A stretch of 64,000 nucleotides of DNA from Raja brachyura (taxonomy: Eukaryota), in NCBI GenBank assembly GCA_963514005.1, contig OY740795.1:806001-870000 (forward strand), written 5' to 3'. The position numbers and the translations under genes were made by a program. Of the stretch, positions 1,971-62,960 are shown piece by piece. The notes beneath the pieces are model-generated. The model saw only the letters and a program-made list of their open reading frames with translations, was not told where the DNA came from and made no database searches. Each line of letters begins with the position of its first letter. Position 1 is the stretch's first letter.

Positions 1971-4685
1971 ACACATTACCGATTTTAATATCTTTCTAGT
2001 GCAAATGACCGGAAAAAGTCTGTCCAGGCATTGCGCATGAACACTTTCAAACTTCGATACGCAATAAAATGTACAACACTTGTGGCGCAGGGCAGGATGA
2101 TGCAGCTCGAGATTGCCAGAAATAAAACCACCGACCGTCTGCGATTTACCATCTCCGGGTCTTTCTTTTTCTCCCCACCGCTGAGATCACGGAAATTTCT
2201 GTGGATTCGACTGGCCACGAAAACACGTCTTGCGGTGAGGGCGTTAAACAACAAAATCAGGCAGAATGGTATCGCCATGGAGGAAAACTGTTCGGTGCAA
2301 TAGAACACCATCCATTCGTGACGCATGTAAAAATGGACACGTTTCCGGCAGCCATGTGGTCCACCCCATCCGCGATAAGGAAAGTAGGCGAAGGGCATGG
2401 GTAGGGTTTGGAGGCTGACCAATGTGATCACTGTCAGGATAACAATCGATGCGGTTCACTCGCTACAATATTTAGTTTTCATGCCCTGAATAGAAATCGC
2501 AACAAAGCGATCAAACGTGAAAGCGACTGTGAATAATGCAGAACAATTCACCGTGACGGATGCCAGGAAAATCGTTATTTTGCACACAGGGGTGTAGTGC
2601 AAGGAAGCATGCCACCAATACAGATCAGCAATGCGGTGAAATATCACCTCACAGAGAATCACAGAGAGGTCGGCGGTCGCCATGGCTACCATGTATGGAG
2701 TGATGCACTTGGAAAGGCCGCATTTGCAACGGGACAAGATCAAAATCGCCATCAGATTCACTGGGAAAGAATGAAAACAGAAATTAATTAATTGTCTGGT
2801 GTACGGGCTGGTGGGAGGGAGCGAACGGAGTAATTTAACCCTGTGTCGCCAGTAGTAGATACAATTTATTTAACGAATTAATATTTGGGACAATCATCCG
2901 TCATTCGTTTGCCAGAAAGACGTTCAATCAGTAAATTTTAAATACGTGATTACCAAAATTAGTGGGATTGCCTTATGAAGACGGAAAGAGAAGGACATGA
3001 AGATGGAAATAGTAGAACACAAGGCAATCCAATTTTGGTCAACAGGAATGTAATCTGGAAATTATTAAAATCCTGTTTACCACAATTAGCGGGGTTGCCG
3101 TTTGTACTAATATAGAACATTTTCAACAAGACAGTCAGTGTATCAAAATGAAATTAAGATATAATTTTTATAACGGTAAATTCAAATGCACAGTATCGTT
3201 TTTATTGCTGAGACGTGAGCAACTTTTGCGTCGGGCACTGAGTCAATCGTGGTCTGGATTAACGCGACCTGTTTTCCAATGGGCCGTCGAGAATGCATTT
3301 CTGAACATGAAACCAAGTAAATGGATTCAGTGAAGCACTGCAAATATAATTACCAACACCCTTCACAAACACGGCTAACAACATTTTGGCAGGTAGTTTC
3401 TGCCGAACAGCGGGCGGAATTCCGTACCGTACCTGACAAGAACAAGTGCTGGAGTATCTCAGTGGCGCAAGCAATATCTCTGGACGACACATATAGGCGA
3501 TGTATCATCTCGAGCCCCTTCTTCAGAATCCGATTGGAAGAATGATATCAAACCGATACGTCAACTTCGTCGGTCCTCCAGAGATGCGGCAAGTCTGACT
3601 GAGTAACCAGTTCTTTGTTTTCACTGGAGCAGGTTGTTGTGGAGCAGGTTGATCGTGCGACCTTCAAATCTGTCTCAACGAAATTATTCCCCTGAGAAGA
3701 ACAGATAAAGCTCACCGTTTGACCTGTTTTTACAACATGTTAAATGGTTAGCTAGACATAGATCACAAGACCTCCACTAACCCAAAACCAATTAGGAGCA
3801 GACGAGTGCATTCGATCCAATTTGTGGTCCCAGCCACAAAGACAGGTGTGTACAGCAATTCGTTCTTCCCACGCACTATTAAAGGATGGAATGATCTCCT
3901 CCAAACCAAGGTTTCCCAGTCAGATGCAAATCAATTTAAAGTGGCACTTTCTTCCCAATAACCCTCTCTGGCTTACCCCTTCCTTCACCATCTCCAGATT
4001 AAATTCCAGTTGGAATATGTTGGAGGACCAAGTAACCAAGAACCAAGAACAAAGAATTTAAGAGCGATACAGAAAATGCAGTGCCGAATTACTGGACAGG
4101 GTGCATTTCTCGTTCTGCCGAATGCAGAACGCACAGTGGATCAGAAATTGCCACTCACAGCGAGGAACAAATTGCCCTTCACTTCGCAAAAGTACATGTG
4201 CGGGAATTGATTTTAGTAAAACGCGGTGAAGGCTGCATTTCTCCAGCTTCACTGAACGGCATCCATCAAATATACCAAAGCTCTTCGTCGCTCCTAAGAT
4301 GTATATTTCTTGTTTCGTTTTAGTTAAGGGATACAGCGCGCACACTAACACCAGCTCACGCACACAAGGCACAATGTATTTTATTTTATGGTGTGAGGAG
4401 AAAACCGAAGATGTCAGGGAAAACCCAAAAGGTAACGGGGAGAACGTACACACTCCGTACAGACAAGCGCAGTAAGATAACTACTCTGGTGCTGCGCCAC
4501 CGTGCCGCCCTAACTCCTGCTGGGCCATTCGCTATGTTCTCTTAACCTTTAATACTCTGCGCTGTTCAAACAGTGTTTGTTAGTTCCATGAGATGTGCTG
4601 ACAATTACCTACCAGATAAACCGATTGCTGCCAGAATCGGATAATACACAAGTCCTATTTTTTCCTCGATCGGAATACCGTGCAT
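1971..4685 (-). pseudogene. GPR139/GPR142-like class A GPCR pseudogene (copy 1)
   Basis: Exon 1 at 4685-4613 (MHGIPIEEKIGLVYYPILAAIGLS, donor GTAGGT). Exon 2 starts at 2760 after ttcccAG (VNLMAILIL...MATADL...TVAFTFDRFVAI). In-frame TGA at 2458-2456 (paralogs have R). About 118 bp covering TM7 are missing relative to the 908-bp exon 2 of the paralogs, which shifts the frame. Confidence 0.9.
3705..4056 (+). mobile_element. Non-LTR retrotransposon 3' end with (AACCAAG)n tail, in the GPCR1 intron
   Basis: Translates to ...SNSFFPRTIKGWNDL. A similar second copy lies at ~4985-5268. It is absent from the paralogous introns. Confidence 0.7.
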
Positions 4686-4984
4686 TTTAATGCGAAAGTC
4701 CAGGCGATCACGGCAGGTGGAGCCGCCCTGCGGTTGTCAGCGAACCAAACCAATATCTGCCCTATCTATAAAGAAATAAAGGACAAAGCAGGCAAGGGGT
4801 TAACATCCCTGAGGGCTTTAGTTACACATTTTTGAACAAACATCTACTGTTTTCCATGTAATATTCAAAATCACAATCATGGTGGCGACATTTCCAACAG
4901 TAGACAGTGAACCATGGATTTTGCAAATCCCAAACTATTGCCGGCGAAAGTTGAACCTGTTCTACTCGCGTTTCCAAACCTACA

Positions 4985-5268
4985 CAAGACCTACACAAAC
5001 CCCAAACCAATTAGGAGCAGATTAGGGCATTCGGTCCAATTTGTGGTCCCAGCCACAGACAGATGTGTGTAGCAATTGTTCTTCCCACGCACTATTAAAG
5101 CATGGAATAATCTCCACCAAACTACGGTTGCCCAGCCAGATGCAACTAAATTTTAATTGGCACTTTCTTCCCAATAACCCTCTCTGGCTTAATCCCTCCC
5201 TTCACCCTCCAGTATAAATTCCAGTTGGAATATTTTGGAGGACCAAGTAACCAAGAACCAAGAACCAA
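4985..5268 (+). mobile_element. Second copy of the same retrotransposon 3' end, upstream of GPCR1 exon 1
   Basis: Shares aacccaaaccaattaggagcag...ttggaggaccaagtaaccaagaaccaagaac with 3780-4050. Confidence 0.7.
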
Positions 5269-7530: not shown

Positions 7531-7902
7531 CGCGCGATTGGAATCCTCCTGTTTTTTGTAGTGTCACTCTGCTTACGCCGTGAGTACCGGTCCCCTACTC
7601 CCGCACAGTTCGGGTTGAACATAAAACAACCCGAGTCCACTCCGACCTGAATTTCAAACACTGTCCGCGATTTATCCTTCTTCCGTGGTTCGCGCGAATT
7701 CCCACTCACCTCTCCCTGTGTTTCATCCACAGACACCTTCAGTCAGTCAGTGACCCAGAGCCCGAGTACGGTGACTGCAAAAGAGTGCCAACCTGTCACC
7801 ATCACCTGCCTTTTCCAAGAAGGTTCCTGGGGTTACTACGAATTTAAGGTTGGACATTTCTTCAAGCATGCACAACCCGTTGGCGGAACAGATTACAATT
7901 GA
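7531..7902 (+). pseudogene. NAR-TCR-type V segment pseudogene (leader exon plus 5' half of the V exon)
   Basis: Hydrophobic leader exon ~7531-7579 (AIGILLFFVVSLCLR, phase-1 donor GTGAGT at 7580), 153-bp intron, acceptor AG at 7731-7732. V exon reads HTFS-QSVTQSPSTVTAKECQPVTITCLFQEGSWGYYEFKVGHFFKHAQP, with an extra FR1 Cys (7786-7788) before the canonical Cys (7807-7809). No in-frame ATG (TAA at 7516). Stop at 7900-7902. No FR3 or RSS found. Confidence 0.75.
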
Positions 7903-9458: not shown

Positions 9459-10951
9459 CAATGAAATTAGAAACTGGAACAGTCCCCGAGGATTGGCGTA
9501 CTGCGCATGTTGTTCCATTGTTTAAAAAGGGTTCTAAAAGTAAACCTAGCAATTATAGACCGGTTAGTTTGACTTCAGTGGTGGGCAAATTAATGGAAAA
9601 GATACTTAGAGATAATATATATAAGTATCTGGATAAAGAGGGTCTAATTAGGAACAGTCAACATGGATTTATGCCTGGAAGGTCATGTTTGACTAATCTT
9701 CTTGAATTTTTTGAAGAGGTTACTAGGGAAATTGACGAGGGTAAAGCAGTGGATGTTGTCTATATGGACTTCAGTAAGGCCTTTGACAAGGTTCCTCATG
9801 GAAGGTTGGTTAAGAAGGTTCAACTGTTGGGTATAAATGCAGGAATAGCAAGATGGATTCAACAGTGGCTGAATGGGAGAAGCCAGAGGGTAATGGTGGA
9901 TGGCTGTTTGTCGGGTTGGAGGCAGATGACTAGTGGGGTGCCTCAGGGATCTGTGTTGGGTCCTTTGTTGTTTGTCATGTACATCAATGAACTGGATGAA
10001 GGGGTGGTAAATTGGATTAGTAAGTATGCAGATGATACCAAGATAGGGGCTGTTGTGGATAATGAAGAGGATTTCCAAAGTCTACAGAGTGATTTAGGCC
10101 AGTTGGAAAAATGGGCTGAAAGATGGCAGATGGAGTTTAATGCTGATAAATGTGAGGTGCTACACCTTGGCAGGACAAATCAAAATAGGACGTACGTGGT
10201 AAACGGTAGGGAATTGAAGAATACAGTTGAACAGAGGGATCTGGGAATAACCGTGCATAGTTCCTTGAAGGTAGAATCTCATATAGATAGGGTGGTAAAG
10301 AAAGCTTTTGGTATGCTAGCCTTTATAAATCAGAGCATTGAGTATAGAAGCTGGGATGTAATGTTAAAATTGTACAAGACGTTGGTGAGACCAAATCTGA
10401 GTATGGTGTACAATTTTGGTCGCCCAATTATAGGAAGGATGTCAACAAAATAGAGAGGGTACAGAGGAGATTTACTAGAATGTTGCCTGGGTTTCAACAG
10501 CTAAGTTACAGAGATAGGTTGAATAAGTTAGGTCTTTATTCTCTGGAGCGCAGAAGGTTAAGGGGTGACTTGATAGAGGTCTTTAAAATGATGAGAGGGA
10601 TAGACAGAGTTAATGTGGACAAGTTTTTCCCTTTGAGAATAGGGAAGATTCAAACAAGAGGACATGACTTTAGAATTAAGGGACAGAGGTTTAGGGGTAA
10701 CATGAGGGGGAACTTCTTTACTCAGAGAGTGGTAGCGGTGTGGAATGAGCTTCCAGTGGAAGTGGTGGCGGCAGGTTCGTTGGTGTCATTTAAAAATAAA
10801 TTGGATAGGCATATGGATGAGAAGGGTATGGAGGGTTATGGTATGAGTGCAGGCAGGTGGGACTAAGGGAAAAAAGTTGTTCGGCACGGACTTGAAGGGC
10901 CGAGATGGCCTGTTTCCGTGCTGTAATTGTTATATGTTATATGGTTATATG
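9459..10951 (+). mobile_element. Young 5'-truncated CR1-type LINE (RT domain), tail (ATGGTTAT)n
   Basis: ORF 9461-10453 has NYRPVSLTS, YMDFSKAFD, GVPQGSVLGP and YADD. One frameshift near 10397, then ORF 10480-10866. GTAAA is duplicated at 9454-9458 and 10952-10956, and an empty site is visible near 12910. Confidence 0.95.
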
Positions 10952-11930: not shown

Positions 11931-12072
11931 ACTCAACACGTCGCAGGAACAGTTTCCATGCATTTTGCTAAAATGTGATGAAGTGCCGGAGACGGTAACC
12001 AGCTTCTCCGCATGTCACAGTCTCCAACATTCAATGTTAAAACAATAACAATTCCCCTGTTATTTTCTGCAG

Positions 12073-12378
12073 ACTCAATTTCCGCGGGTTCCCAGAGTCC
12101 GCCTCAACAATACTCTCTTTCTGGTGACGCTGTCACTCTTAACTGCGTATATTCCGGAATCTGCTCGTACACAGTACACTGGTACCGACAGTTCCCAGGG
12201 CAGGCTCTGGAATTCCTGCTCCAAAGACACACTTCAGGAATACAAGAAAAGGAAGAGGCTGCCGAAGGCCGTATTACAGGTTCTCTTGATCCTGGCCAGA
12301 AAATCAGCCAGTTAACGCTATCTGAAGTACTGCCGAGCGACGAGGCTGTGTATTACTGTGGGATGAGTCCGCGCATCG
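12073..12378 (+). CDS. TCR delta-type V segment, leaderless, with extra CDR1 Cys (NAR-TCR 'supporting' Vdelta type); open frame
   Basis: Phase-1 acceptor ttctgcAG at 12071-12072. Reads DSISAGSQSPPQ...VTLNCVYSGICSYTVHWYRQFPG...SDEAVYYCGMS. Canonical Cys at 12144, extra Cys at 12162, WYRQ and YYC present. No hydrophobic leader exon seen in the upstream ~1 kb. Confidence 0.88.
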
Positions 12379-12417
12379 CACAGTGACACAGCGCAGTGAC
12401 ATAGCTGTACCAAAACC
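12379..12417 (+). promoter_or_regulatory. 23-bp spacer recombination signal sequence
   Basis: CACAGTG + 23 nt (acacagcgcagtgacatagctgt) + ACCAAAACC. Confidence 0.95.
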
Positions 12418-12580
12418 TCAGTGCGGCGGAACACAGGCACACAGCACTGCAGAACATCTGTGGCGCTATCCGAGAACTTCAGATTTGTATGGATTGATTA
12501 CACGTTACGAGGGAAGGAAGATAAATATAAAGCTTACAAAGATAAATTGCGTTCAAACTTACAGACGCACAATTAGTCTG

Positions 12581-12619
<39 letters not shown>

Positions 12620-12819
12620 NNNNNNNNNNNNNNNNNNNNNNNNNNNNNNNNNNNNNNNNNNNNNNNNNNNNNNNNNNNNNNNNNNNNNNNNNNNNNNNNN
12701 NNNNNNNNNNNNNNNNNNNNNNNNNNNNNNNNNNNNNNNNNNNNNNNNNNNNNNNNNNNNNNNNNNNNNNNNNNNNNNNNNNNNNNNNNNNNNNNNNNNN
12801 NNNNNNNNNNNNNNNNNNN
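12620..12819. other. Assembly gap (200 N) following a (GA)n microsatellite
   Basis: Run of N. Confidence 1.
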
Positions 12820-14049: not shown

Positions 14050-14356
14050 ATTTCATTTCCGCGGGTTCCCAGAGTCCACCTCAACAATCCTCTCTTTCTG
14101 GTGACACTGTCACTCTTAACTGCGTATATTCCGGATTGTGCTCATACACAGTACACTGGTACCGACAGTTCCCAGGGCAGGCTCTGGAATTCCTGCTCCA
14201 AAGACACACTTCTGGAAAGCAAGATAACGAAGAGGCTGCCGAAGGCCGTATTACTGGTTCTCTCGATGCTGGCCAGAAAAATCAGTCAGTTAACGCTATC
14301 TGAAGTACTGCCGAGCGACGAGGCTGTGTATTACTGTGGGATTAGTTCGCGCATCG
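14050..14356 (+). pseudogene. Second supporting-type Vdelta segment with a +1 frameshift in FR3
   Basis: Paralog of 12073-12378 (CVYSGLCSYTVHWYRQ). It has 5 A at 14277-14281 where the intact copy has 4. The downstream frame gives ISQLTLSEVLPSDEAVYYCGIS. Confidence 0.8.
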
Positions 14357-14395
14357 CACAGTGACACAGCGCAGTGAGATAGCTGTACCAAAAGC
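14357..14395 (+). promoter_or_regulatory. 23-bp spacer recombination signal sequence
   Basis: CACAGTG + 23 nt + ACCAAAAGC. Confidence 0.92.
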
Positions 14396-14607
14396 TCAGC
14401 GTGGCGGAACAAAGCACTGCAGAACATCTGCGGCGCGAGGGAAGGAAAGAAAGAGAAAGATTACAAATATCAATTATGTTCAAACTTTCAGAAGCGCATT
14501 AGTCTGGGAAGAGAGAGAGAAAGAGAGAGAGTGATGGGGGACGGAGAGGGAGAATGTGAGGGAAAGGGAGAGGGAGAGGGAGAGGGAGAGAGAGAATGGG
14601 GGTGAGG

Positions 14608-14921
14608 NNNNNNNNNNNNNNNNNNNNNNNNNNNNNNNNNNNNNNNNNNNNNNNNNNNNNNNNNNNNNNNNNNNNNNNNNNNNNNNNNNNNNNNNNNNNN
14701 NNNNNNNNNNNNNNNNNNNNNNNNNNNNNNNNNNNNNNNNNNNNNNNNNNNNNNNNNNNNNNNNNNNNNNNNNNNNNNNNNNNNNNNNNNNNNNNNNNNN
14801 NNNNNNNNNNNNNNNNNNNNNNNNNNNNNNNNNNNNNNNNNNNNNNNNNNNNNNNNNNNNNNNNNNNNNNNNNNNNNNNNNNNNNNNNNNNNNNNNNNNN
14901 NNNNNNNNNNNNNNNNNNNNN
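14608..14921. other. Assembly gap (314 N) following a GA-rich repeat
   Basis: Run of N. Confidence 1.
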
Positions 14922-18925: not shown

Positions 18926-20699
18926 TTTTAAAAGGACTGCAACACGGAAATAGGCTGCCCATGGTGTAATATGTGCATTGGCCACTAGATGACGCTTACT
19001 TTCCCGCTCTCATTTTCCAATTTGTTTAATTAATTAATGTGCAACTTTTGGCAGTGACATCCTTCTCGATTATATTTCATCTAAATCTGTGGAAATGTTC
19101 ATGTAGTTCTGTGACGTTGGTCACAAAACAGATTTCTAGACACATTTTTGATGCTCGGCCCACAGCCCAATGTCACTGTCAGGGGATGCTGCATGATAAT
19201 ATTGGAAGAGTTGACGTATGGACACCTGGAGGAGTGTATTAACACGTAATTTATTAGCCATTGGTGAACGACAGAGTGCTCGAGCAATGATTTATTTTAG
19301 AACAAGATATCTTCATTTTAATTCATAATTGACAGAATATTTTATTTTCTTCACAGATTGTGAGGGAAGACGAAAAATAGGTAGATACAAAGTTGACCCT
19401 CCACCAGCCCCAACGTTGTAGTATCAGGGAAACAGTATGCGGCTTACTGCCTCTTAGGTGCAAATGAACAGCAGGCAGTAACTCTGCAGGAAAATGATAG
19501 ATAACGTTTCTGGTCAGGATCATTCTTCCGTCTGAAAGTAGGGCGAGGCCACTGGATGCAAGAGTAGGCCAGAACAAGGCAGGGAAGGCAACAAATGTCT
19601 AAGAAAGAAATTAGCCCATAATCACCCATTATTGACTGGGGAACAAGTGATAACAAACAACTACAAAAATGCGAGCAGTACAACTAGTATGATGACTTAG
19701 CTGGGGAGAGGGTGAGAGAAAGGGAGACATGCAACATACGATATGCTGTCCCTCCATTTTTCGCGTGGCCTCGCTCTAACAGTTGAGGAGGACAACGACA
19801 GAAAGGTTTACATGGGTATGGGAACAGGTGATAAAATGTTTGCCCACCGGAAGAACGTAAAGGCAAATGCGGAAAATAATTTGTTACCGTTCATAGGACC
19901 ATAGAATCACAGAGTCATAGAGTGATACAGTGTGGTATCTGGGCCTTCGGCCCAACTAGCCTCACCGGCCAACTATATCCCAGCTACACCAGTCCCACTT
20001 GCCTGCACTTGGTCCATATCCCTCCAAATCTCTCCAATCTACGTACCTGTCTCATTGTTTCTTAAACGATGGGATAGTCCCAGCCTCGACTACCTCCTGT
20101 GGCAGCCTGTTCCATACGCCCACTACCCGTTATGTGAAAAAGTTTCCCCACGGATTCCCATTAAATATGTTTCCCTTCTCCATAAACCTATGTGCTCTGG
20201 TAGTCGATTCTCTGGGCAAAGGTTTCTGTGCATCTACCCGATATATTCCTCTCGTGATTTTTTATTTCTCACACTCCTCACCTGTAGCTTTACATTCGAT
20301 AGATGTTTTCCGCATACATAAGGTATTTTAATCACGGCATCTGTATGGAACTTTACACAATCTAGATCATCCGCTGCTAAAACAGCAGATTCTCTTTGAA
20401 CCGATGATGAAAGGAAATCATATATACAACACGTTGCACATATATTCACTCATTTTGCAAACAATATGTTCTCGGCATATGTGTACAAATTCTTGAAAAA
20501 CAGAAGTGGAATGATTGAACTGAGCACTTGGGAATACGCACACGTGGCGCGATTGAGCCCATGAACCCCCGAAGCACTTGCGCGTGCACGACAGGGCGAA
20601 TGGACATAGAATGTCCACACATTAAATGTTGTATTTTCATATAAACCCTACAGAATGAAGCCTAGCAGGTCGATCGTTTTTGTTATATTAATTTAACTA

Positions 20700-22732
20700 T
20701 CAGTTTGCCGATTTAAATATCTTTCCAGTGTAACGGATTGGAATGGTTAGCACGCGGAACAGCTCCTCTCTGAACTTTTTCTGTGTCACGATGTAAATGG
20801 CCGTGTTGGTGCAGGAGCTCAGCAGCTGAAGCATATATCCAACCCTTTCCAATTCTTCCAAAGGGTATCCCGAGGACTTGTACATAAACACTTTCAAACT
20901 TCGAACCGCTATAAAATGTACAACACTTGTGGCCCAGAGCAGGATGAAGCAGCTCGAGATTGCCAGAAGTAAAACGACCGACCGTCTGCGGTTCACCATC
21001 TCCTGGTCTTTCTTTTTCTCCCCACCGCTTTGGTCTCGGAGGTTCCTGCGGACCCGACTGGCGATGAAAATACGCCTGACAGTAAGCGCGTTAAACAACA
21101 AAATCAGGCAGAATGGAATCGCCGGGGTGAACAACTGTTCGATCCAAGAGTACACCATCCATTCGGGACGCATATAAAACTCTAAAGGTTTGAGGCAGCC
21201 GTGCACCCCACCCGTTCCGGGATAGGAAATGTATGCGAAGGGCAAGGGAAGGTTTTTAAGGCAGACGAACGGGCTCACTGTCAGGATAACAATCGACGCG
21301 CTTCTCTCGGTGCAATATTTTACTTTCATGTTCTGAGTGGAAATCGCAACAAAGCGATCAAATGTGAAAGCGACTGTGAACCATACAGAAGAATCCACCG
21401 CCACGGGAGCAAAATAGAATATAATTTTGCACACAGGAGTGTAGGGCAAGGAAGCAGGCCACAAATAAATATCAGCAATCCGACGAAGTATCACGTCAAT
21501 GAGAAGCACAGAGAGGTCCGCGGTCGCCATGGCTACCATGTAACGAGTGGTGCACTTGGAGAGGCCACACTTGCCACGGGACAGGATCATAATCGCCATC
21601 AGATTGACTGGGAAGGAATAAAAACATAAGATGATTAATTGTGTGCGGTATGCGTCGGTAGGTGAGGGTTATTTAAACGTGCGAATATATGGGACGATCA
21701 AACAACGTTTGCTATAAAGATGTTCAATCGTCAGCAAATTATTAAATAACTGGTTACCAAAATGAGTGAGATTTCCGTTTCTATTTATCTTCACATATTT
21801 CTGCCAACCGTTTAATATTGAAGCTTTGTTATCCCGGCATCATCTCTGCAGCTACAGTCTATATTATATGTACTTGAAAAACCTATCTTAAAATTGCCTC
21901 CCGACCGCAGGGGGAGCATGTACGGTTGTTCACAGTGATGTTTTTTGTTGAACAAGTTGTTCATACGATCTTCAAATCTGTCTCTGCGAAATTATCCCTG
22001 TGAAATTTTAAGAGCTTTACAGATAATGCTGTGGCAAATTACTGGACGGTGTGTGTTTTTGTTTTCTACGGAGTGCACTACGCTCGGCGGAACAGGTAGT
22101 CTCACACACTGCGATGACGCCGTGTCGCTTGCCCCACCAACAGAGCAGGTGCGGGGCATCGTTTGCAGCCAAAATCCGTGCAGGTTAAATTTGTATCAGA
22201 GTCTGTGAGCCGCCATCCGTCAACGAAGCCAACGCGTTCCCTCTCTCCGAAGATGCAAATTGGTTTATTTTAGTGTAGTTTAAATGTACAGCATCGAAGC
22301 GAGTCCTCCGGTCCATCGGGTCCGCGCACACCAGCGACCCACCCAGCCCAACAATATTCGACACACATTAGCGACTTAAAACAAATATATACTAAATCAA
22401 TTAACCTACAATCCTGTCTGTCTTGGAGAGTTTGAGGTAACCGAAAATCTCGGAGAAAACCCACGTTGGTCACGAGAAGAACCTACAAATTATGTAAAGA
22501 CAAGCAACCGTAGTGGGGAGCAAGCCCTGCACCATCTATCGCTGCGCCATCGTGCAGCACTTAACCCTGCCGGGTTATTCAGTATGTTCTCTTAATCTTT
22601 ACTCCTATGCACTTTTCAAACAGTCTTTGTTAATTCAATGTGATGTACCGAAAATTACCTACCGGGTACTCCAATTGCTGCAAGAATCGGGTAATACACA
22701 GATTCTGTATACACGATCTCACTATAATACAT
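20700..22732 (-). CDS. GPR139/GPR142-like class A GPCR, intact, 325 aa (copy 2)
   Basis: Exon 1 at 22732-22663 (MYYSEIVYTESVYYPILAAIGVP, donor GTAGGT). Exon 2 at 21607-20700 after ttcccAG. Phase-1 junction gives GVPVNL. Seven hydrophobic segments, MATADL, TVAFTFDRFVAI, LQLLSSCTNTAIY..TQKKFR. Confidence 0.92.
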
Positions 22733-23769
22733 TTTTGATGCGACGGTCTAGGCGATCACTCCTGGTGCTGCCACTCAGCGATTGTCAGCGGAACAAACCA
22801 ATCTCTGGCACATTTATAAAGTAAATAAAGGAGAAAATAGGCAATTAGATTCCATCCCTGTGGACATTACTTACAGACTTTGGAACAAACATGTACTTGT
22901 TTTCAAAGTAATATTCAGATATCACAATCATGCGGGCGACCGCTCCATACATTTCCAACAGCAGGCAGTGAAGCATGAATTTAAATAAAAAATCCAAACT
23001 AACGCTAGCGCAGTGAAGTTGCTCGCGAGTGTTCCGAGCAGCGATTTATTTCCTTGAACCTTACGTCCGATGACGGGAGAAGGAAAGCTGTCAATTCTGG
23101 CTTGTACCTGTGCAACTTGAGTATCCAGACGGCGATAGCAGAGCCAGAGCGCAACGCAGTATCGGCACCTGAGCATATCCACTGGGCACTTTGAGGCAGT
23201 TTTCTCAGAAAAGTAACTAATGGACGAAAGAGCAGCAAAATAGAGAAGAACCGTCGATTTTATCAAGCATCAATAAAACACGAACATGTAAATTAATTAT
23301 CATGGCAGCGTCGTCTGTCGGCTCCGTCCCGGGGTTAGCAGCCAGGAGTCGGAAAGGATGATACGGACACGGGGGGGGGGGAGGGGGGGGGTCATGAGGT
23401 CATAAGGGTTCGGTGTAAAATAAGGCCATTCTGCCCATTATATCTTATCCGCCTTTCAATCATGACTTATCTATACCCTCTCCAACACCACTCTCTCACA
23501 TTCTGCTCTTAACCACTGACACCTGTTCTAATCAATAATCTATCTATCTCTGCGTGGAAAATATCAACAGAGTTATCCCCCACAGCCTTTGTGACAAAGT
23601 GTTCCACAGATTCAACATAGAGGACTATAAAGGCGTGTTGACCAAATGGGTCTATGAAGACATGAGAGAGGAGCTCATGCTAATCTGAAAAGGACCCGTT
23701 CACACCTGCTCTTTGATTCCTGTCTGCCAAACAATGTTCTATCCATGTCAACACGCTAACCCCACTACC

Positions 23770-25660
23770 AATATTGTCCGCTGTTTGCTTCCAATATTGT
23801 CTATTGTCTATTGAGCTAGCCAAGGTAAACTGGAAAGGGATCCTAACAGGAATGTCGATGAAAAAGCAATGGCTGGAATTTCTGGGCACTATCTGGAAGA
23901 TGCAGGATCATTTAATTCCAAAAAGGAAGAAAGATTCTAGGTGAGTAGGAGGCAAGCGTGGGTGGCAAGAGATGTTAGGGATAGAATAAAACTACAATAA
24001 AAGATGTGTAACACAGCAAAGAGTAGCCGGAAGCCAGAGGATTGGGAAACTTTCATAACACAACAGAAGGAAACAAAACGGGCAATACGGCCCGAAAAGA
24101 TGAAGTACGAGGTGAAGCTGGACAGGAATAGAAGCAAAGACAGTGAAAGCTTATTTAGTTATGTCAAGGGAAAAATAGTAGCCAAGTCAATTGCTAGTCG
24201 CTTGAAGGCAGACACGGGTGAAATTATTATGCGTAACAAGAAATGAAAGAAGAGTTCAACAGGTACTTCGGATCTGACTTCACTAATGGAGCGAGAGAGA
24301 AAACGGGGTATTACAGAGCGGTTAGCCTGACGTCGGTGATAGAAAAGATGCTAGAGTCAAGTATTAAAGAGGTAATAATGGGGCATTTTGATAACAGAAA
24401 AAGGATTAGTCCAAGTCAACATGGATTTATGAAAGAGAAATCATGCTTGTGTCTGTTTTGAGGATGTGACAAGTATAATGGATGAAGAAGAGCCAGTGGA
24501 TGTAGTGTATCAAGACCTTCTTGGAAGCCTTTGATAAGGTCCCGCAATTAGAGCATATGGTATTGGGGGTAGGGTATTGACATGGATAGAAAATTGGTTG
24601 GCAGATAGGTAGCAAAGAGTAGGAATGAGCGGGTCATTTTCAGAATAGCGGGCAGTGGCTAGTGGAGTGCCGAAAGGCTCGGTGTTGTGGCCGCAACTGT
24701 TTACCATATATATCCATGCTTTGGAAGAGGGAATTATGAGCAACCGGCAAGTTGGCAGTGTGAACTGGGAGGAGGATGTTAGGAGGTTGCAGCGTGACCT
24801 GGGCAGATGCGTGGCAGATGCAGTACAATATAGATAACATAGAAACATAGAAACATAGATATTAGGTGCATGAGCAGGCCGTTCGGCCCTTCGAGCCAGC
24901 ACTGCCATCCATTTTGATCATGGCTGATCGTCCGCAATCAATAACCCGTGCCTACCTTCTCCCCATATCCCTTGACTCCACTAGCCCCAAGAGCTCTATC
25001 CAACATTTTCTTAAGTCCATCCAGTGATTTGGCATCCACTGCCCTCTGTGGCAGGGAATTCCATAACTTCCATAACCCATAACTTCTGGGTTAAAAAGTG
25101 TTTTCTCACCTCAGTCTTAAATGACCTCCCCTTTATACTAATACTGTGGCTCCTGGTTCTGGACTCACCCAACATTGGGAAAGGTTTTCCTGCATCTAGC
25201 TTGTCCAGTCCTTTTGTAATTTTATATGTTTCTATAAGATCCCCCTAAACTCCTTCTAAACTCCAGTGAGTTCAAGCCTAGTATTTTCAATCTTTCCTCA
25301 TTTGACAGTCCCGCCATCCCAGAGATCAATCTCGTGAACCTACGCTGCACTGCCTCAATCACAAGGATGTCCTTCCTTGCCATTTAAGACTGAGGTGAGA
25401 AAAAACCTTTTCACTCTCAGAGTTGTGAATTTGAGGATTTCTTGCCACAGAGGGCAGTGGGGGCGAAAGCACTGGATGGATTTAAGAGAGAGTTAAATAG
25501 AGCTCTCGGGGGTAGTGGAATCATGGGATGTGGGGAGAAGGCAGGCACGGGTTATTGATTAGGGACGATCAGCCATGATCACAATGAATGGCGGTGCTGG
25601 CTCGAAGGACCGAATGGCCTCCTCCTGCACCTATTTTCTCTGTTCTATATTTCTATGTTT
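23770..25660 (+). mobile_element. Degenerate CR1 LINE shared with the GPCR3 block, with a nested reversed CR1 3' fragment (~24835-25380)
   Basis: Homologous to 50490-52680. RT motifs YRAVSLTSV and GVPKGSVLWP. Confidence 0.8.
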
Positions 25661-47194: not shown

Positions 47195-49470
47195 TCACTT
47201 TACCGATTTAAATATATTTCCAGTGCAACGGATCGGATAAGTTAGCACACGGAACAACTCATCTCTGAACTTGCTCTGAGTCACAGTGTAAATGGCCGTG
47301 TTGGTGCAGGAGCTCAGCAGCTGAAGCATAGATCCAACCTTTTCCAATCCTACCATAGGGTTTGCCCAGGACCTACGTATAAACAAACCCAGACTTCGAA
47401 CAGCAATAAAATGTGCGACACTTGTGGCCCAGAGCAGGATGAAACAGCTCGAAATTGCCAGAAGTAAAACGACCGACCGTCTGCGGTTCACCATCTCTTG
47501 GTCTTTCTTTTTCTCCCCACCGCTGAGGTCTCGGAGGTCCCTTCGGACTCGACTGGCCACGAAAATGCGCCTGATGGTGAGCGCGATAAACAACAAAATC
47601 ACGCAGAATGGAATTACCGGGGTTAACAACTGATCGGTCCAAGAGAACACCATCCATTCGCGACGCATATAAAAATATACGTCTTTGACACAGCCCAGAT
47701 TCAGTTCAATTGGGAGGTAAGAAACGTATGCGAAGGGCAAAGGTAGATTCTGAAGGAAGATGCATGGGGTCATTGTCGTGATAACAATCGACGCGCTTCT
47801 CTCGGTGCAATATTTGGCTTTCATATTCTGAGTAGAAATCGCAACAAAGCGATCAAAGGTGAAAGCGACTGTGAACCATACAGAACAATCCACCGCCACG
47901 GGAGCCAGGAAGAGTATTATTTTGCACACAGGTGTGTAGGGCAAGGAAGCGCGCCACCAATGAATATCAGCAATCCGATTTAATATAACGTCAATGAGAA
48001 GCACAGAGAGGTCTGCGATTGCCATGGCTACCATGTAACGAATGATGCACTTGGAGAGGCCGCACTTGCCACGGAACAAGATCACAATCGCCATCAGATT
48101 CACTGGGAAGGAATGAAAACATAAACTGATTAATTGTGTGTGGTATGGGTTGGTGGGTGAGGGCAATTTAAACGTGCGCATATTTGTGACGAAATGTTCC
48201 CTATTTCCTTCGCTCCATAGATGCTGCCTCACCCGTTCAGTTCCGCCAGCATGTGTGTCTACATTTGAGAACATGATGTCAAGCAATGGCATTCCGTGCA
48301 GCACTGCAATTATAATTACATACATCCTTCAACGATAAACAAGGGTAACAATTTAACGAGTAGTATTTTCTGCTGAATAGCGGGCGGGCCTCCGTGTTTT
48401 ACCTGACAATACAATTCCTGAAGTATCTCAGTGGCTCAAGTAGCAACTCTGGATAACATGGGTAGGCGACGTTTCAGTTCGGGCCCTTTCTTCAGTCTCC
48501 GATTGGAGGAAGGATCCCGACATGATACGTCGCCTACGTCGGTCTTCCGGAGATGCTACAAGACCCGCTGAGTTACCCAGTGCTTTGTTATCCCGGCATG
48601 ATCGCTGCAGCTACAGTCTCTGTTATCTGTACTTAAAATCTATCTTAAATTTGCCTCCCAACAGAGGGGGAGCATGTCTGGTTGTTCACACTGACGTTTT
48701 TGGTTGAGTAAGTTGTTCATACGATCTTCAAATCTGTCTCTGCGAAACTATCCCTGTGAAATGTTAAGAGCTTTACAGAAAATGCAGTACCAAATTACTG
48801 GACGGGTGTATTTTTCTTTCCACCGACTGCACTACGCTCTGCGGAACAGGTAGTCTCACACACAGCGAGGACCCCGTGTCGCTTGCCCTGCCAACAGAGC
48901 ATGTGCGGGGCATCGGTTGTAGCCAAAATTCGTGGAGGCTAAATTTGTACCAGAGTCTATGAGCGGCCATCCGTCAATCAAGCCAACGCGTGTCCTCTCT
49001 CCGAAGATGTAAATTGCTTTATTTTAGTGTAGTTTAGATGTACAGCACCGAAGCGAGTCCTCCGGTCCATCGAGTCCGAGCAGACCAGCGACCCACGCAG
49101 ACCAACAATATTCGGCACACACTAGCGACTTAAAACAAGTATATACCAAATCAATTATCCTACATACCTGTCTGTCTTGGAGATTTGGAGGAAACCGAAG
49201 ATCTCGGAGAAAAGCCACGCTGGTCACGAGAAGACCCTACAATTTCTGTAGTGGGGAGCGAGCCCTGCACCATCTACCGCTCCGCCATCGTGCTGCACTT
49301 AACCCTGCCGTGTTATTCAGTATGTTCTCTTAATCTTTCCTCCTCTGCGCGTTTCAAACATTCTGTGTTTGTTCAACGTGATGTGCCGACAATTACCTAC
49401 CGGGTACACCAATTGCTGCAAGAATCGGGTAATACGCAGATTCTGCATCCAAGATAGCAATATTATCCAT
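47195..49470 (-). CDS. GPR139/GPR142-like class A GPCR, intact, 325 aa (copy 3)
   Basis: Exon 1 at 49470-49401 (MDNIAILDAESAYYPILAAIGVP, donor GTAGGT). Exon 2 at 48102-47195 after ttcccAG. Same motifs and exon lengths (70 + 908 bp) as copy 2. Confidence 0.92.
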
Positions 49471-50248: not shown

Positions 50249-50284
<36 letters not shown>

Positions 50285-50489
50285 GTGGAAAATATCCACA
50301 GATTTAGCGCCCACAAAGTATTCCACAGATTGAACACATAGGACTATGGAGGAGTCAGTTGAACAAATGGGCTATGAAGACATGAGAGAGGTGCTCATGC
50401 TATTCTGAAAATGACCCGTTCACATCTGCTCTTTGCTTCCTGTCTGCCAACCAATTTTCTACCCATGTCAACATGCTAAACCCCAATAC

Positions 50490-57455: not shown

Positions 57456-57629
57456 TTCTACCTTTACCTGTATACACATGTTGCCGCTGTGGCGCAGCAG
57501 GGCGATGATACGGTGCGCCACTCCGGACATCAGCAGTTCTTGACGTTCTTGAGACACATCTTCACTGCCATTAACCAAAGGCCAGACGAGGGCGCCAGAT
57601 TCATGCAGAGTTGGAAAAGTACGTGGTGA

Positions 57630-58640: not shown

Positions 58641-61371
58641 ATCCGTTGGCTGGAAAAACACAAGAAAATACTTTGACACTCTTGCCCCCCCCCCCCTCCT
58701 TTTTACGACAGCCTTCCAATCGGGTTCAGTTATAAGATAGTCGTCTGTTTAGGACGGAGAATATTTGATGAAGGTAACTTGCATCGGCCAGCAGTTCGAA
58801 GTAGAATTTGGTCGCAGTCAGAGTTTGAAATTATAAACTTACAATTTGAACCCTGGGAACGTATTGCTTTGTTGCTATTTCATTGTTTACGCATTTCCTT
58901 ACAAGTAGTTTAGTACGCCATCTGGCGGCGCCGTGCACAATTGCTTGCGTTGGGTATTTGTGCCGTGTTTCTTCATCAACGTGGAGTCCATTGCACAAAT
59001 ATACATGGCGGAGTCGGTAATCTCCGACGCGCGGATCATTTACTTATTGCAACATACGAGGAATTTCATTTCCCAAGGGATTCATACAAATAATATAGAA
59101 AGCAACAGAAGACACAAAATACATTTTAACATAAACATCCATCACAGTGACTCCTCCAGATTCCTCACTGTAATGTGGGTAAAACCAAAAGTTAAATCTC
59201 TTCCCTTCTTTGTCCTCCAGCGGTCGGGGGCCTCAAACCTTCCGTTGATAGGAAGATCTTACTCACGTAGCTGGCGGTGGGCCTTCCTCGTCGGGCTGAT
59301 CGGCTCCTGCATCGGTGGGGAATCTCAGTTACCCCGCGCCGGCGACCTGACCTCGGGTCTAGGTTTCTCGAACGTCGTGAGGCTTCCGGTGCATCCCGAC
59401 TCGGTCTCTCCAGAGACTGCGAGCCCTTGATGTTAAAGTCTGCAGGCCGTGGTCGGAGCGTAGATCTAAGGCAATTCCTCTAACTCTAGCGAGTACAGAC
59501 TCGGGCCGTTAAGCGCTGATTATATGCTCACCCATTCCTCCCCTCCCTCTCCAGGGCCAGCACAGCCTTGATCAGATGTGTTGCCCAAAACTTCTCACAA
59601 TATCTCTCTCGCATTACATATCCCACGTTACATAGCACAACCGCTTTAATATTACGTATAGGAAAGAACTGGAAATGCTGGTTTAAATCGAAGGTCGGCA
59701 TAATATGCTGGAATAATTCGGCGGGCCAGGCAGCGCCCCTGGGGAGAAGGAATGGTGACGTTTCGGGTCGAGACCCTTCTTCGTACTCTAGACTCTTCAG
59801 GTATGAATTATGTTTTTCGGATCCGTTTCCCCAAAACGTGGGTAATCGGAGCATTCTGGGACTTACGGCACGTCAGGCTGGTTCCGCATTTCTATTTGAT
59901 CACGGCCGATTGCCCCAATTCAATCCCCTATCCCCCTTCTTCCACTTATCACTGGATCCCCCCGAGCCCCAGGAACAGGATATATCACTGTTTCAACATA
60001 CTAAATGGTACGCTCTTCAGTTTGTATCCATATCCGCAGCAATTCATCATCTACATTGGCCTTGACTATCAGCATAATACTATAAAATTATTGTTGGGAA
60101 ACTGAGAAAACTGCAGCTGCTGGATTACACAAGAAATGCACAGAATGCTGGAGTAACTCAACGGGTCAGGCAGAATATCTGGATAACATGGATGTGGTTT
60201 CAGTTCGGGGCCGTTCTTCTGACTGATTGTGGTGAGGGGGGAGAGGAGAACAGTCGAAAGAGAGGAGGGTTAGGGTAAACCCTGGCCATATTTAAGGGGA
60301 CACAGACGAGAGGGGAGGTTGATAGGCAACTAGTTGGATAAAGCCCAGAGATAGACAATATATAATAGACAATAGGTGCAGGAGCAGACTATTTGGCCCT
60401 TCGAGCCAGCACCGCCATTCAACGTGATCATGGCTGATTATCCCCAATCAGTACCCCGTTCCTGCCTTCTCCCTTTATCCCCTGATTCCGCTATTTTTAA
60501 TATCCCTATCTACCTCTCTCTTGATATCATCCAGAGAACCTGCCGCCACCGCCCTCTGAGGCAGATAATTCCACAGATAAAAAGACAGAAACCCTGACAC
60601 ACAAAGGAGTAAACAGCCGGGAATTGTGAAGCTCCTTCCAGTGTTCTACGGCCAGTCCCAACCCCACCAGCACTACAATCAGTCAGAAGAATGGTCCTTA
60701 CCCGAAACTTCACCCATCCATGTTCTCCAGAGATGCGACCTGGTTCAATGTGTTGGGGGGCGGGGGGGGGGGGGATAACGTACGTCTATTTATGAGAGGC
60801 TTCAAGAAAAGTCCTAGTACAAATGCGCCAGTTGATGAGGGAAAAGTCGTACACAGTACATGTCCAGCAGGGCGTGTTATAAAGTGCCGCTTAGTTGGCT
60901 GCTCTGGAACCGTAGCACGAAGTCCAGGTGGATCTTGCTAAATGGGTAGAAAATCAGCTTCAAGGGAGAAAGCAGAGTAGGATGGCGGAAGATATTTTTT
61001 TCGGATTGGATGCCTGCGACTAGTTGTGTGCCTCAAGGATCAGTTCTGGGCCCATTGCTGTTTGTCATTTATATCGAAGATTTGGACGAGAATGTAGCAG
61101 GCATGAATAGAACGTTTGAGGATGACGCCACGGTAGGTGGAGTCGTAGAGAGCGATGATGATTATCAAAAGCCACATGAGGATCTTAATCAGTTCAACAA
61201 GCGGGCCGAGCAATGGTTGTTGAATTTTAATTAGGATAAGTGAGAGGTTTGGGTTTTTGGGAAGTCAAACAGGGCAGGGCCTTTACGGCGAATAGCAGTG
61301 CCGTGGGGAGCACTGCAGGGCCACGGACTCCAACTTCCCGTCACGCCAACTATCTGCTCCCTGAAAGAAAG

Positions 61372-62921
61372 ATGGAAATGCTGCTTTCTTTCATATTTTG
61401 TGCATGTTTATTCCGTAGGTACCTTTAAAGCAAAAGTGAGGTGAACGTCTGTGATTTGTCTGTAATATTCACAACGTTCGTGAAATTTTCAAAGAGTCCG
61501 GGAGTAGTGTTCACAATCGGCCTGGCGACTGGGGCTCGTAAAATCCATGGACTCCCCGAGTACCGTCTGTTTTGAGTTGCGTGTACTTGCTGAGCACTTC
61601 AATATGAAAAATGAGTTAGGGCAGGATATTTGCCATGTGCGTCATTGTGTTTTTATTCGTAGCAGTTAATTCAATCTGATGTCTGCCACGGTCGTCTCCC
61701 TAGACCTTGCTGGGTTCAATCACGATCACAGCCAATGGGTGCTGTGAGCTAAAGGACCCATTGTGGAAAAATCTATTGTTGCAACGACACGATGCAGCGC
61801 TTAAAGTCCTTGGATTGGCCGCATTTGTTGCGTTGCCGCCAGTTCCCATCGCCTAATTGATGGAAAAGCGTGGAGGTTTTGGTTAGGATGCAGGCCAGGA
61901 TTACCAGAATACTCGTTGGAAGGAACTGAAGATGCTGGTTTTAACGGAAGATTGAGTATCTCTAGCTCTGTACCCAGAATACTACTTGGATTAAAGGGTG
62001 CTAACATTCAGGATAGTTGGGGCAGAGTTGGCTTGTTTCCCATGGATTGTCAGGGGCTTCGACCTGATTAAAGCATATGAACTTATGAGAGATATGGAAA
62101 GTGTAGGCATTCAGAACGGGTTTTTTCTATCACACGGTGGAATTATTAAAGATTAAATGCCCCACCATTAAGGTGAAGGGGGCAAAACGCAAACGATATG
62201 TACGGGTTAATTATGGAAAGAGCGATAAGTACATGGGACATGCTGCCGGGGATGGTGACAGAGGCGATATGACAGTGGCTTTTAAGAGGCTTTGAGATAA
62301 ACACACGGACATGCACGGAAAGGACAGATGTGAGTGATTTACAGGAGATACGATTAGTTGAGCTTTGCATCATGTTCGGCACAGACATTACTGCCTGAAC
62401 GGCTTGTACCGATTCTGTCCGTATTTCTGTTCTATGTTATCCTTCGCAGCTGATGTTTTCTGAAACAAGGAGCAATATTATGTAAAAGTGTGTTTTGTCC
62501 GCATGTCAAAACTTCCCATTTGTTCGGCGGTAACACTAAAAGGTTAAGCATGTTTCCCTTCCATCGTCTAACGGCCCCTATTTTTCTCTTGACACGGAAT
62601 CTAATTCACAGGACATGGCGCTGGGGATTCGGTGACTCAGAGCCAGCCTTTACTGAGACCGAGACAGGGTGACTTGGTGAAACTAACCTGTACCTACAAT
62701 ACTGCAGCATCCACCTATTATTTATATTGGTATCGACAAATTGCCGAGGAAAATCCTGAGTTTATTGTGCTGATACGATCTTGGGACCAACGGGAAACAC
62801 TGGGAGACATATTAGAGAAACGGTTCTCCACGGATCTCCAGAAAGCGACATCATTTGTCCATTTAAATATTTGGGGTCTCCAGCTGACAGACTCTGCAGT
62901 GTATTACTGCGCCCTGAGTTC
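61372..62921 (+). CDS. Conventional TCR alpha/delta V gene (leader plus V exon), apparently functional
   Basis: Leader exon 61372-61414 MEMLLSFIFCACLF with phase-1 donor GTAGGT; intron 61415-62611. V exon 62612-62921 reads RHGAG-DSVTQSQP...LTCTYNTAASTYYLYWYRQ...RFSTDLQK...LTDSAVYYCALS. Open frame. Confidence 0.9.
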
Positions 62922-62960
62922 CACAGTGATTGGAAGCAGTCTCTGCGCAGTGCAATAACC
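62922..62960 (+). promoter_or_regulatory. 23-bp spacer recombination signal sequence
   Basis: CACAGTG + 23 nt (attggaagcagtctctgcgcagt) + GCAATAACC. Confidence 0.93.

What the first reader, a model, noticed from the sequence alone, without database searches (positions are those of the whole stretch)
1971..62960. GPCR genes interleaved, antisense, among TCR alpha/delta V segments
Seen: the order is GPCR-psi(-), NAR-TCR V(+), two supporting V(+), GPCR(-), GPCR(-), TRAV/DV(+). Known: olfactory receptor genes adjoin the distal end of the mammalian TRA/TRD locus. Inference: a different GPCR family occupies an analogous niche here, apparently co-expanding with the V array. I cannot verify whether this linkage has been reported.
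Basis: partly seen in the sequence, partly recalled or inferred. Interest (0 to 1): 0.75.

Follow-up and report, generated by a model that had tools for sequence, protein, structure and literature searches.

The report
Orphan receptor genes among skate TCR V genes
In this skate-like genome, genes of a large shark-and-ray family of orphan receptors lie between T-cell-receptor V gene segments on the opposite strand, much as smell-receptor genes lie among mammalian TRAV genes, and this looks like a long-lived by-product of gene duplication, not a working partnership.

Summary
In order, the window holds:
- a dead GPCR gene (-);
- a decayed NAR-TCR V (+);
- two leaderless supporting V segments (+), one intact and one carrying an extra base;
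- two intact GPCR genes (-);
- one TRAV/DV-like V (+).

All three RSS-bearing V segments have 23-spacer signals.

They belong to the cartilaginous-fish expansion that NCBI names "probable GPR139". They are only weakly similar to human GPR139.

Neither assembly gap affects the claim. Both gaps sit in a purine microsatellite that ends each V repeat unit, and each gap-free block holds both a GPCR and a V on its own.

New here: the closest GPCR relatives in thorny skate and smalltooth sawfish lie on the same chromosome-sized contigs as NAR-TCR gene models. Their RefSeq accession numbers are within 2 to 8 of each other. The neighbourhood therefore seems to be shared by skates and sawfish.

Co-expansion is not shown in this window, where the GPCR module and the V module duplicated separately. 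No RNA run was found, and nothing links the receptors to T cells.

The scan had already noted this layout on other DNA of this genome. Seven paper searches found no description of it.

The parts
1985..2760 (-). GPCR pseudogene, exon 2. It has an in-frame stop at 2456-2458 and a 118-nt deletion that removes TM7 and the NTAIY motif.
   Evidence: Pfam 7tm_1 scores 30.1 bits on the N-terminal piece. Identity to GPCR A and B DNA is 82% and 80%.
4613..4685 (-). GPCR pseudogene, exon 1 (ATG through the GTAGGT donor)
   Evidence: tblastn of relatives' N-termini and the sequence itself.
7537..7579 (+). Leader exon of a decayed NAR-TCR V. It reads ATT in place of ATG and has a GTGAGT donor.
7733..7899 (+). 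NAR-TCR V exon remnant covering FR1, CDR1 and the start of FR2. It has the Cys in the a-b loop and lacks the Trp of WYRK. It is broken by stops after about 7884.
   Evidence: The hallmarks are from PMC1845163 passages. PDB hits are weak, to Vdelta1 and TRA only. There is no Pfam hit.
9459..10951 (+). LINE fragment (RT ORF 9461-10453) inserted into V repeat unit 1
   Evidence: RVT_1 scores 122.7 bits. The insertion is bounded by the homology breaks seen.
12073..12417 (+). V1, an intact leaderless supporting V. The splice acceptor is at 12070-12072 and there is a Cys in CDR1. The 23-RSS has its heptamer at 12379-12385 and its nonamer at 12409-12417.
   Evidence: It is 86-89% identical to the second V domain of the A. 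radiata two-V models.
12620..12819 (.). Assembly gap 1 (200 N), within a (GA)n tract at the end of V unit 1
14050..14395 (+). V2, a copy of V1 with one extra A in an A-run at about 14277-14281, which puts it out of frame as written. The 23-RSS heptamer is at 14357-14363.
14608..14921 (.). Assembly gap 2 (314 N), within the purine-rich tract at the end of V unit 2. Its right flank is unique sequence.
20700..21607 (-). GPCR A, exon 2 (from the TM1 end to the stop codon)
   Evidence: 7tm_1 scores 62 bits. The acceptor is shown.
22663..22732 (-). GPCR A, exon 1 (23 codons plus 1 nt, GTAGGT donor). The intron is 21608-22662.
47195..48102 (-). GPCR B, exon 2
   Evidence: 7tm_1 scores 50.6 bits.
49401..49470 (-). 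GPCR B, exon 1. The intron is 48103-49400.
62503..62542 (+). Candidate leader exon of V3 (13 codons plus 1 nt, GTTAAG donor). This is weak evidence.
62612..62960 (+). V3, a TRAV/DV-like V exon. The 23-RSS has its heptamer at 62922-62928 and its nonamer at 62952-62960.
19488..24286 (-). Duplicated GPCR module, copy A. Copy B is 46022-51004 and the pseudogene copy is 802-4937. No copy contains a V.
   Evidence: Self-blastn.

Best explanation
This is part of the V region of a skate TCR alpha/delta locus, in the zone that carries NAR-TCR cassettes.

A module of about 4.8 kb has been copied several times among the V segments and lies on the strand opposite to them. The module carries a two-exon gene of the cartilaginous-fish 'probable GPR139' orphan receptor expansion. 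Two copies are intact and one is dead.

The most likely mechanism is ordinary birth-and-death evolution. Unequal or repeat-mediated recombination in a LINE-rich, duplication-prone V array also copies whatever unrelated gene sits inside it. The receptor genes would then be passengers, as olfactory-receptor genes are among mammalian TRAV genes.

Shown here: the gene structures, the order and orientation, the duplication modules, the family membership, and the presence of close relatives beside NAR-TCR models in two other batoids.

Inferred:
- The mechanism of duplication.
- Independent expression of the receptors.
- Somatic loss of the receptors. Any T cell that joins a V lying 5' of them to downstream D/J by deletion would lose these genes from that chromosome.
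For: Identity of the parts:
- Three 23-RSS sites, and no others, were found.
- The two-exon GPCR structure has GT..AG boundaries conserved in all three copies.

Family:
- 1928 proteins scored E<=0.001 among 3581 candidates. The 120 listed are nearly all cartilaginous fish, and most are named 'probable G-protein coupled receptor 139'. The best identity is 82%.
- Those hits lie on many different contigs, so the family is dispersed.
- In a tree of 63 rows, the window's A and B fall in a clade of six skate sequences with support 100. That clade sits inside a batoid clade of 11 with support 99.

Coding state:
- A and B each have 70 + 908 nt of open coding sequence.
- Between A and B over 301 exon-2 codons, dN/dS is 0.49 and dS is 0.27.

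Duplication:
- The GPCR modules are 85-86.5% identical and the V units are 86.7% identical. LINE or repeat fragments lie at the module edges.

Other species:
- A. radiata GPCRs P0002, P0003 and P0110 and NAR-TCR models P0135 and P0136 all sit on a contig of 59,888,763 bases.
- P. pectinata GPCR P0020 and NAR-TCR models P0138 and P0139 all sit on a contig of 57,793,762 bases.
- A. radiata accessions run GPCR XP_032890424, NAR-TCR ..444, GPCR ..447, NAR-TCR ..449.
- P. pectinata accessions run GPCR XP_051882913, NAR-TCR ..920 and ..921.
- In every control, blocks of accession numbers correspond to contigs.
Against: - In this window no duplication unit holds both a V and a GPCR. Hitch-hiking on V duplication is therefore inferred from the neighbourhood, not seen.
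- A dN/dS of 0.49 shows only moderate constraint.
- No RNA run holds the gene, and the laid contigs showed no exon 1 to exon 2 joint. Expression and splicing are therefore unproven.
- Reading closeness of accession numbers as physical closeness rests on my recollection of how RefSeq numbers its models. Only the contig-level part of that was checked here.
- R. longicauda GPCRs on the NAR-TCR contig are 336 and 757 accession numbers away from the NAR-TCR model, and they belong to another subfamily.
- The batoid clade also holds A. radiata P0024 and P0029, which are on a different contig.
- D, J and C genes were not located.
Confidence: 0.72

Rival explanations
1. Functional coupling. The receptors sit in the V array because they use its chromatin, for example stochastic one-gene or one-allele choice as in olfactory receptors, or because they act in the T-cell lineage.
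For: - The neighbourhood appears to be shared by skates and a sawfish.
- Intact copies persist with dN/dS below 1.
- The A and B lineages each have closer relatives in other skate genera than each other, so both have been kept for a long time.
Against: - No expression data exist.
- The family lies on many contigs.
- Part of the same batoid clade lies on another A. radiata contig.
- Genes between V and J are lost from the chromosome by deletional joining in many T cells. This is an inference from the RSS orientation, and it argues against a need for them in mature T cells.
Confidence: 0.1
2. A decaying graveyard. This stretch is an inactive fringe of orphon V segments and receptor genes, unlinked to any working D-J-C, so the interleaving has no consequence for rearrangement.
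For: - Two of the four V elements on the + strand are dead as written.
- One of the three GPCRs is dead.
- V1 is leaderless, yet its own NAR V has lost its start codon and 3' half, and no NAR J is found. V1 is therefore probably stranded.
- There is no J motif or C-domain hit in the window.
- LINE content is heavy.
Against: - The V1 and V2 exons plus RSS are 96% identical while the unit as a whole is 86.7% identical. This suggests constraint or gene conversion on the V exon.
- V3 and V1 are open, and their RSS heptamers are perfect.
- Unchecked scan notes place further V arrays on both sides, from -742 kb to +3.5 Mb.
Confidence: 0.12
3. Assembly artefact. A scaffold misjoin at one of the two gaps brings unrelated GPCR and V sequence together.
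For: There are two N runs inside the finding. The right flank of gap 2 is unique, so continuity there is untested.
Against: - Each gap-free block contains both a GPCR and a V by itself.
- The flanks of gap 1 continue a head-to-tail tandem repeat.
- The same neighbourhood is indicated in two other species' assemblies.
Confidence: 0.03

Closest known systems
Olfactory receptor genes interspersed among mammalian TRAV genes (human OR10G2 and OR4E2; mouse Olfr1507-1509)
   Same: Unrelated class A GPCR genes lie between V segments of the TRA/TRD locus and are conserved in synteny across species (PMC4574546 passages; PMC8514952 passages).
   Different: - The family is different. Pfam gives 7tm_1 only, with no olfactory-receptor family among the hits.
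- The genes here have two coding exons.
- In the window they sit beside NAR-TCR cassettes and a TRAV/DV-like V.
- The window alone holds three copies in 50 kb, and scan notes report many more. The quoted mammalian cases have two or three genes at the 5' edge.
Human GPR139 (solved structures 7vug and 9m42)
   Same: It is a class A receptor. It is the best PDB match for GPCR B (E 2.2e-8, 37 bits), and NCBI uses its name for the family.
   Different: The similarity is weak. For exon 2 of GPCR A, the prolactin-releasing-peptide and ghrelin receptors score higher, and GPR139 is not among the four hits at E<=1e-5. The window genes have DRF and NTAIY where class A receptors usually have DRY and NPxxY. 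The usual motifs are recalled.
NAR-TCR doubly rearranging TCR delta cassette of cartilaginous fish
   Same: A leader, then a NAR-type V with a Cys in the a-b loop and no Trp in WYRK, followed a few kb downstream by a leaderless V delta with a Cys in CDR1 (PMC1845163 passages).
   Different: - The NAR V is dead. Its start codon reads ATT, and the exon is truncated after FR2.
- No NAR D or J was found.
- A LINE is inserted between the NAR V and the supporting V.
- The supporting V is tandemly duplicated.

Membership tests
Class A (rhodopsin-type) GPCR | Match to Pfam 7tm_1 above the curated cutoff, over the whole 7TM core | tested here: met
   Exon 2 of A scores 62 bits and exon 2 of B scores 50.6 bits, against a cutoff of 30.5. 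Both cover profile positions 2-260 of 260.
Cartilaginous-fish 'probable GPR139' expansion | Close similarity to, and clade membership with, annotated members | tested here: met
   Identity to L. erinacea and A. radiata proteins is 76-82%. The clade of six has support 100. The exon 1 peptide and the splice position are shared.
GPR139 orthologue | Strong and specific similarity to vertebrate GPR139 | tested here: not met
   B scores 37 bits at E 2.2e-8. For exon 2 of A, GPR139 is absent at E<=1e-5 and other peptide receptors score higher.
Olfactory receptor (OR) family | Match to an olfactory-receptor Pfam family | tested here: not met
   7tm_1 is the only family reported at E<=0.01.
NAR-TCR V | Typical leader, Cys in the a-b loop, and no Trp in the WYRK motif (PMC1845163) | tested here: met
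   The leader exon aligns with relatives' leaders but starts with ATT. One search shows ...AKECQPVTITC... and ...GHFFKH... The domain matches the first V domain of six two-V models at E 1e-20 to 1.6e-11. As a gene it is dead.
NAR-TCR V | Own D and J segments, followed by a splice donor | tested here: not met
   No J-type motif occurs anywhere in the window. No match to the J part of the models was found.
NAR-TCR supporting V delta | No leader exon, with a splice acceptor directly before the V | tested here: met
   A polypyrimidine tract and CAG lie at 12070-12072. No convincing leader lies within 1.2 kb upstream.
NAR-TCR supporting V delta | Conserved Cys in CDR1 | tested here: met
   V1 reads CVYSGICSY and V2 reads CVYSGLCSY. 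The same position is seen in six relatives.
TRAV/TRDV gene segment (V3) | V-set exon followed by a 23-spacer RSS | tested here: met
   V-set scores 49.3 bits. CACAGTG, a 23-base spacer and GCAATAACC are found. The best single-domain PDB matches are TCR alpha chains and Vdelta1.
TRAV/TRDV gene segment (V3) | Split leader, and linkage to J and C | tested here: inconclusive
   There is only a weak candidate leader at 62503-62542. There is no J or C in the window.

The most novel reading that the evidence does not exclude
The GPCR and NAR-TCR neighbourhood may be ancient, dating at least to the common ancestor of skates and sawfish. On this reading the TCR alpha/delta V array has served as a long-term nursery for one branch of a lineage-specific, possibly chemosensory, receptor family. 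Elasmobranchs and mammals would then have independently ended up with different sensory-type GPCR families inside the same antigen-receptor locus. That convergence might reflect a shared chromatin regime of stochastic, one-gene-at-a-time choice, as opposed to chance.
Probability: 0.1. Interest if true: 0.7.

Novelty: new variant of a known kind. Interest (0 to 1): 0.42.

Why it matters
- Anyone who annotates elasmobranch TCR alpha/delta loci should expect two-exon orphan receptor genes between the V segments. ORF-based calls of those genes are wrong at the 5' end, because they give a truncated 299-aa or an over-long 376-aa product.
- If the skate-sawfish conservation holds on real maps, there is a second, independent case of a multigene GPCR family lodged in the TRA/TRD V array. 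The question of whether V arrays favour such passengers then becomes testable.
- There is also a simple somatic prediction. T cells that use upstream V segments should have deleted these receptor genes.
- By itself the layout says nothing about what the receptors do.

Tried and rejected
- Exact consensus RSS search found 0 matches. A relaxed scan was needed.
- A J-motif regex over all six frames found nothing.
- I first noted the pseudogene as frameshifted near 2455 (note 1). One search showed an in-frame stop plus a 118-nt deletion instead.
- I first took the 376-aa ORF as GPCR B. Searches showed that its first 75 or so residues are intron read-through.
- The V3 word search gave 14 proteins among 18 candidates, none from skates, sawfish or Heptranchias. 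The same-contig test failed for V3. It worked only with V1 (6 proteins among 14 candidates).
- No NAR-TCR model of Heptranchias was found, so the shark cluster on the 29.8-Mb contig could not be tied to a TCR locus.
- R. longicauda gave same-contig linkage only, at 336 and 757 accession numbers' distance.
- The look-up of sequencing runs listed 21 runs, none on record as RNA.
- Read laying on 19500-24300 with 4 runs gave contigs of about 100-800 letters, mixed with repeat and paralogue matches (most laid records were 90-95% alike). No listed joint fitted the predicted intron. Of the 10 listed differences inside exon 2, 3 fall on third codon positions. 227 further differences were not shown, so I draw no conclusion from this.
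- Scan notes searched for 'constant' did not locate TRDC or TRAC.
- PMC7909615 and PMC1458790 are not held.
- Supplements of PMC12227049, which hold the locus maps, were closed. They might show non-receptor genes in the locus.

Full report
**What is in the window**

The window has two N runs, at 12620-12819 and 14608-14921. It is rich in LINE fragments:
- RVT_1 matches 9461-10453 and 42964-43752.
- Among 150 of the 162 open segments of 85 aa or more, four hit RVT_1 and one hits an endonuclease-reverse-transcriptase family.
- That same sweep found only two other kinds of protein domain above noise: three V-set segments and one further 7tm_1 piece.
- There was no constant-domain exon and no other gene.

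**The receptor genes**

Two long minus-strand ORFs, 20700-21599 and 47195-48325, hit Pfam 7tm_1. Neither ORF is the real gene.
- Relatives begin with a 23-residue peptide that is missing from both ORFs.
- tblastn finds that peptide about 1.05 kb (A) and 1.3 kb (B) upstream, at 22732-22664 and 49470-49402. A weaker copy lies at about 4685-4617.
- Each of these peptides is followed by G|GTAGGT.
- Each downstream block is preceded by a pyrimidine tract and CAG, and the split codon restores the Val of the family's PVNLMAI motif.
- GPCR A is therefore 22732-22663 plus 21607-20700, and GPCR B is 49470-49401 plus 48102-47195. Each has 978 nt of coding sequence by arithmetic.
- In copy A, the ATG that opens B's long ORF reads ATT and is followed by an in-frame TAA. 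This confirms that the stretch is intron.

The third copy (exon 2 at 1985-2760) has an in-frame stop at 2456-2458 and a 118-nt deletion that removes TM7.

**Family**

The word search with B returned 1928 proteins at E<=0.001 among 3581 candidates.
- The 120 listed are nearly all sharks, rays, skates and a chimaera, and most are named 'probable G-protein coupled receptor 139'.
- The best matches are 82% identical, from L. erinacea and A. radiata.
- They lie on many different contigs.
- None is identical to the window, so the window's own proteins are not in that collection.
- Similarity to human GPR139 itself is weak: 37 bits for B. For exon 2 of A, other peptide receptors score higher.
- The name therefore marks a lineage-specific expansion and not an orthologue.

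Between A and B, 234 of 301 exon-2 residues are identical, and dN/dS is 0.49 with dS 0.27. Constraint is moderate.

In a quick maximum-likelihood tree of 63 rows (61 of the 120 hits plus A and B):
- A and B fall with P0001 to P0004 of two other skate genera in a clade with support 100.
- B groups with P0001 and P0003 (support 91), so the A/B split seems older than these genera.
- The next clade out (11 rows, support 99) holds sawfish and stingray proteins. It also holds two A. radiata proteins that lie on another contig.

**The V elements**

*V1 (12073-12378)*
- It is open and scores 52.1 bits on V-set.
- It is preceded directly by a splice acceptor, and no credible leader lies within 1.2 kb.
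- It has a Cys in CDR1.
- It is followed by CACAGTG, a 23-base spacer and ACCAAAACC.

*V2*
- It is a copy of V1 with one extra A in an A-run, so it is out of frame as written. A homopolymer error cannot be excluded.
- The V exon plus RSS is 96% identical between the two copies, while the repeat unit as a whole is 86.7% identical.

*The NAR V remnant*
- An earlier scan note on this window (s1-880951) pointed me to 7.5-8 kb.
- The leader exon at 7537-7579 reads IGILLFF... where A. radiata models read MGILLFF.... It starts with ATT and has a GTGAGT donor.
- After a 153-nt intron, the V exon at 7733 matches the first V domain of six two-V-domain gene models as far as about 7884. Stops follow.
- It has the Cys in the a-b loop and lacks the Trp of WYRK. 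Passages of PMC1845163 give these as NAR-TcRV hallmarks. The same passages give 'no leader, Cys in CDR1' for the associated V delta.
- By itself the remnant gives only weak PDB hits to Vdelta1 and TRA (E 1.3e-4) and no Pfam hit.
- No NAR J exists in the window.
- A LINE lies between the remnant and V1.
- V1 is therefore intact but probably stranded.

*V3 (62612-62921)*
- It scores 49.3 bits on V-set.
- Its best single-domain PDB matches are TCR alpha chains and Vdelta1.
- It has a 23-RSS.
- Only a weak candidate leader was found.

A 20-residue FR3-like fragment lies on the minus strand at 58977-59036 (E 0.016 at best).

**Gaps**
- Both gaps follow the same purine microsatellite, which ends each V repeat unit.
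- Sequence right of gap 1 matches the start of the unit at 94.7%. This is what a head-to-tail tandem would give.
- Right of gap 2 the sequence is unique, so that join is untested.
- Nothing I describe crosses a gap.
- Each gap-free block carries both a receptor gene and a V, so a misjoin would not remove the linkage.

**Duplication**
- The receptor module (19488-24286, 46022-51004, 802-4937) and the V module are separate units in this window.
- Their divergences are similar: 85-86.5% and 86.7% identity.
- Co-expansion is therefore not demonstrated here.
- Other scan notes describe V-plus-GPCR units elsewhere in this genome. I did not test those.

**Other species**

- The V1 search found six two-V-domain models.
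- The A. radiata models (P0135, P0136) are on a contig of 59,888,763 bases, as are GPCRs P0002, P0003 and P0110.
- The P. pectinata models (P0138, P0139) are on a contig of 57,793,762 bases, as is GPCR P0020.
- The R. longicauda model is on a contig of 49,537,575 bases, as are P0068 and P0071.
- A. radiata accession numbers run GPCR ..390, GPCR ..424, NAR-TCR ..444, GPCR ..447, NAR-TCR ..449.
- Sawfish accession numbers run GPCR ..913, NAR-TCR ..920 and ..921.
- In all the rows, accession blocks correspond to contigs.
- That order within a contig follows position is my recollection of RefSeq practice and was not tested.
- For R. longicauda the distances are 336 and 757, and those proteins belong to another subfamily.

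**Reads**
- 21 runs were listed and none is on record as RNA.
- Contigs of four runs cover the A module only in short pieces. They show no splice joint and are mixed with paralogues.
- This neither supports nor contradicts expression.

**Literature**
- Passages of PMC4574546 state that OR genes are interspersed among human and mouse TRAV genes. PMC8514952 uses OR10G2 as the 5' border gene of the locus.
- Searches for GPR139 with shark, with cartilaginous fish, with T cell receptor, and for 'coupled receptor 139' with expansion gave nothing relevant. I saw listings only for these, plus one passage that turned out to be a reference-list entry.
- The 2025 map of the elasmobranch antigen-receptor complex does not mention GPCRs in its main text. 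Its supplements were closed.

**Verdict**

The layout is real and robust to the gaps. It appears to be shared with at least one other skate and a sawfish. It is best read as passenger genes in a duplication-prone V array. The scan had already noted and followed up the same layout on other DNA of this genome. What this report adds:
- the two-exon gene model;
- the exact lesions;
- the hallmark tests for the NAR-TCR parts;
- the gap analysis;
- the cross-species accession evidence.

Noticed in passing
window 12040-12440 and 14017-14420: The V exon plus RSS of the two tandem supporting V copies is 96% identical, while the whole repeat unit is 86.7% identical. This points to constraint or gene conversion on the V exon, even though its NAR partner is dead.
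   Followed up: partly
window 58977-59036 (-): A short FR3-like fragment (...SEITDSAMYICAM...) lies on the strand opposite to all the other V elements. Its best E-value is 0.016 and it has no Pfam hit. It may be a V relic or chance.
   Followed up: partly
window 20700-21607 and 47195-48102 (-): Both intact receptors, and their skate relatives, read DRF and NTAIY at the places where class A receptors usually have DRY and NPxxY (sequences). The usual motifs are recalled, not tested.
   Followed up: no
window 34725-35416: A GC-rich low-complexity block reads as long poly-Pro or poly-Gly runs on the two strands. Tandem repeats lie at about 36.9-38.0 kb.
   Followed up: no
window 18263-18748 (+): An ORF matches Pfam ALKBH8_N at 65.6 bits, and a second segment matches it too. 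It probably belongs to a repeat-element ORF and not to a host gene.
   Followed up: no
window 22732-22737: Contigs of three runs show one-base length differences in the A-run just before the start codon of GPCR A. The coding sequence itself is unaffected if the change lies in the run.
   Followed up: no
proteins P0005-P0010, P0014, P0025 and cluster members (Heptranchias perlo): Many near-identical receptors of the sister clade sit on one 29.8-Mb contig, within about 260 accession numbers of one another. This is a large recent local expansion in a shark. Whether it lies in that shark's TCR locus is unknown.
   Followed up: partly
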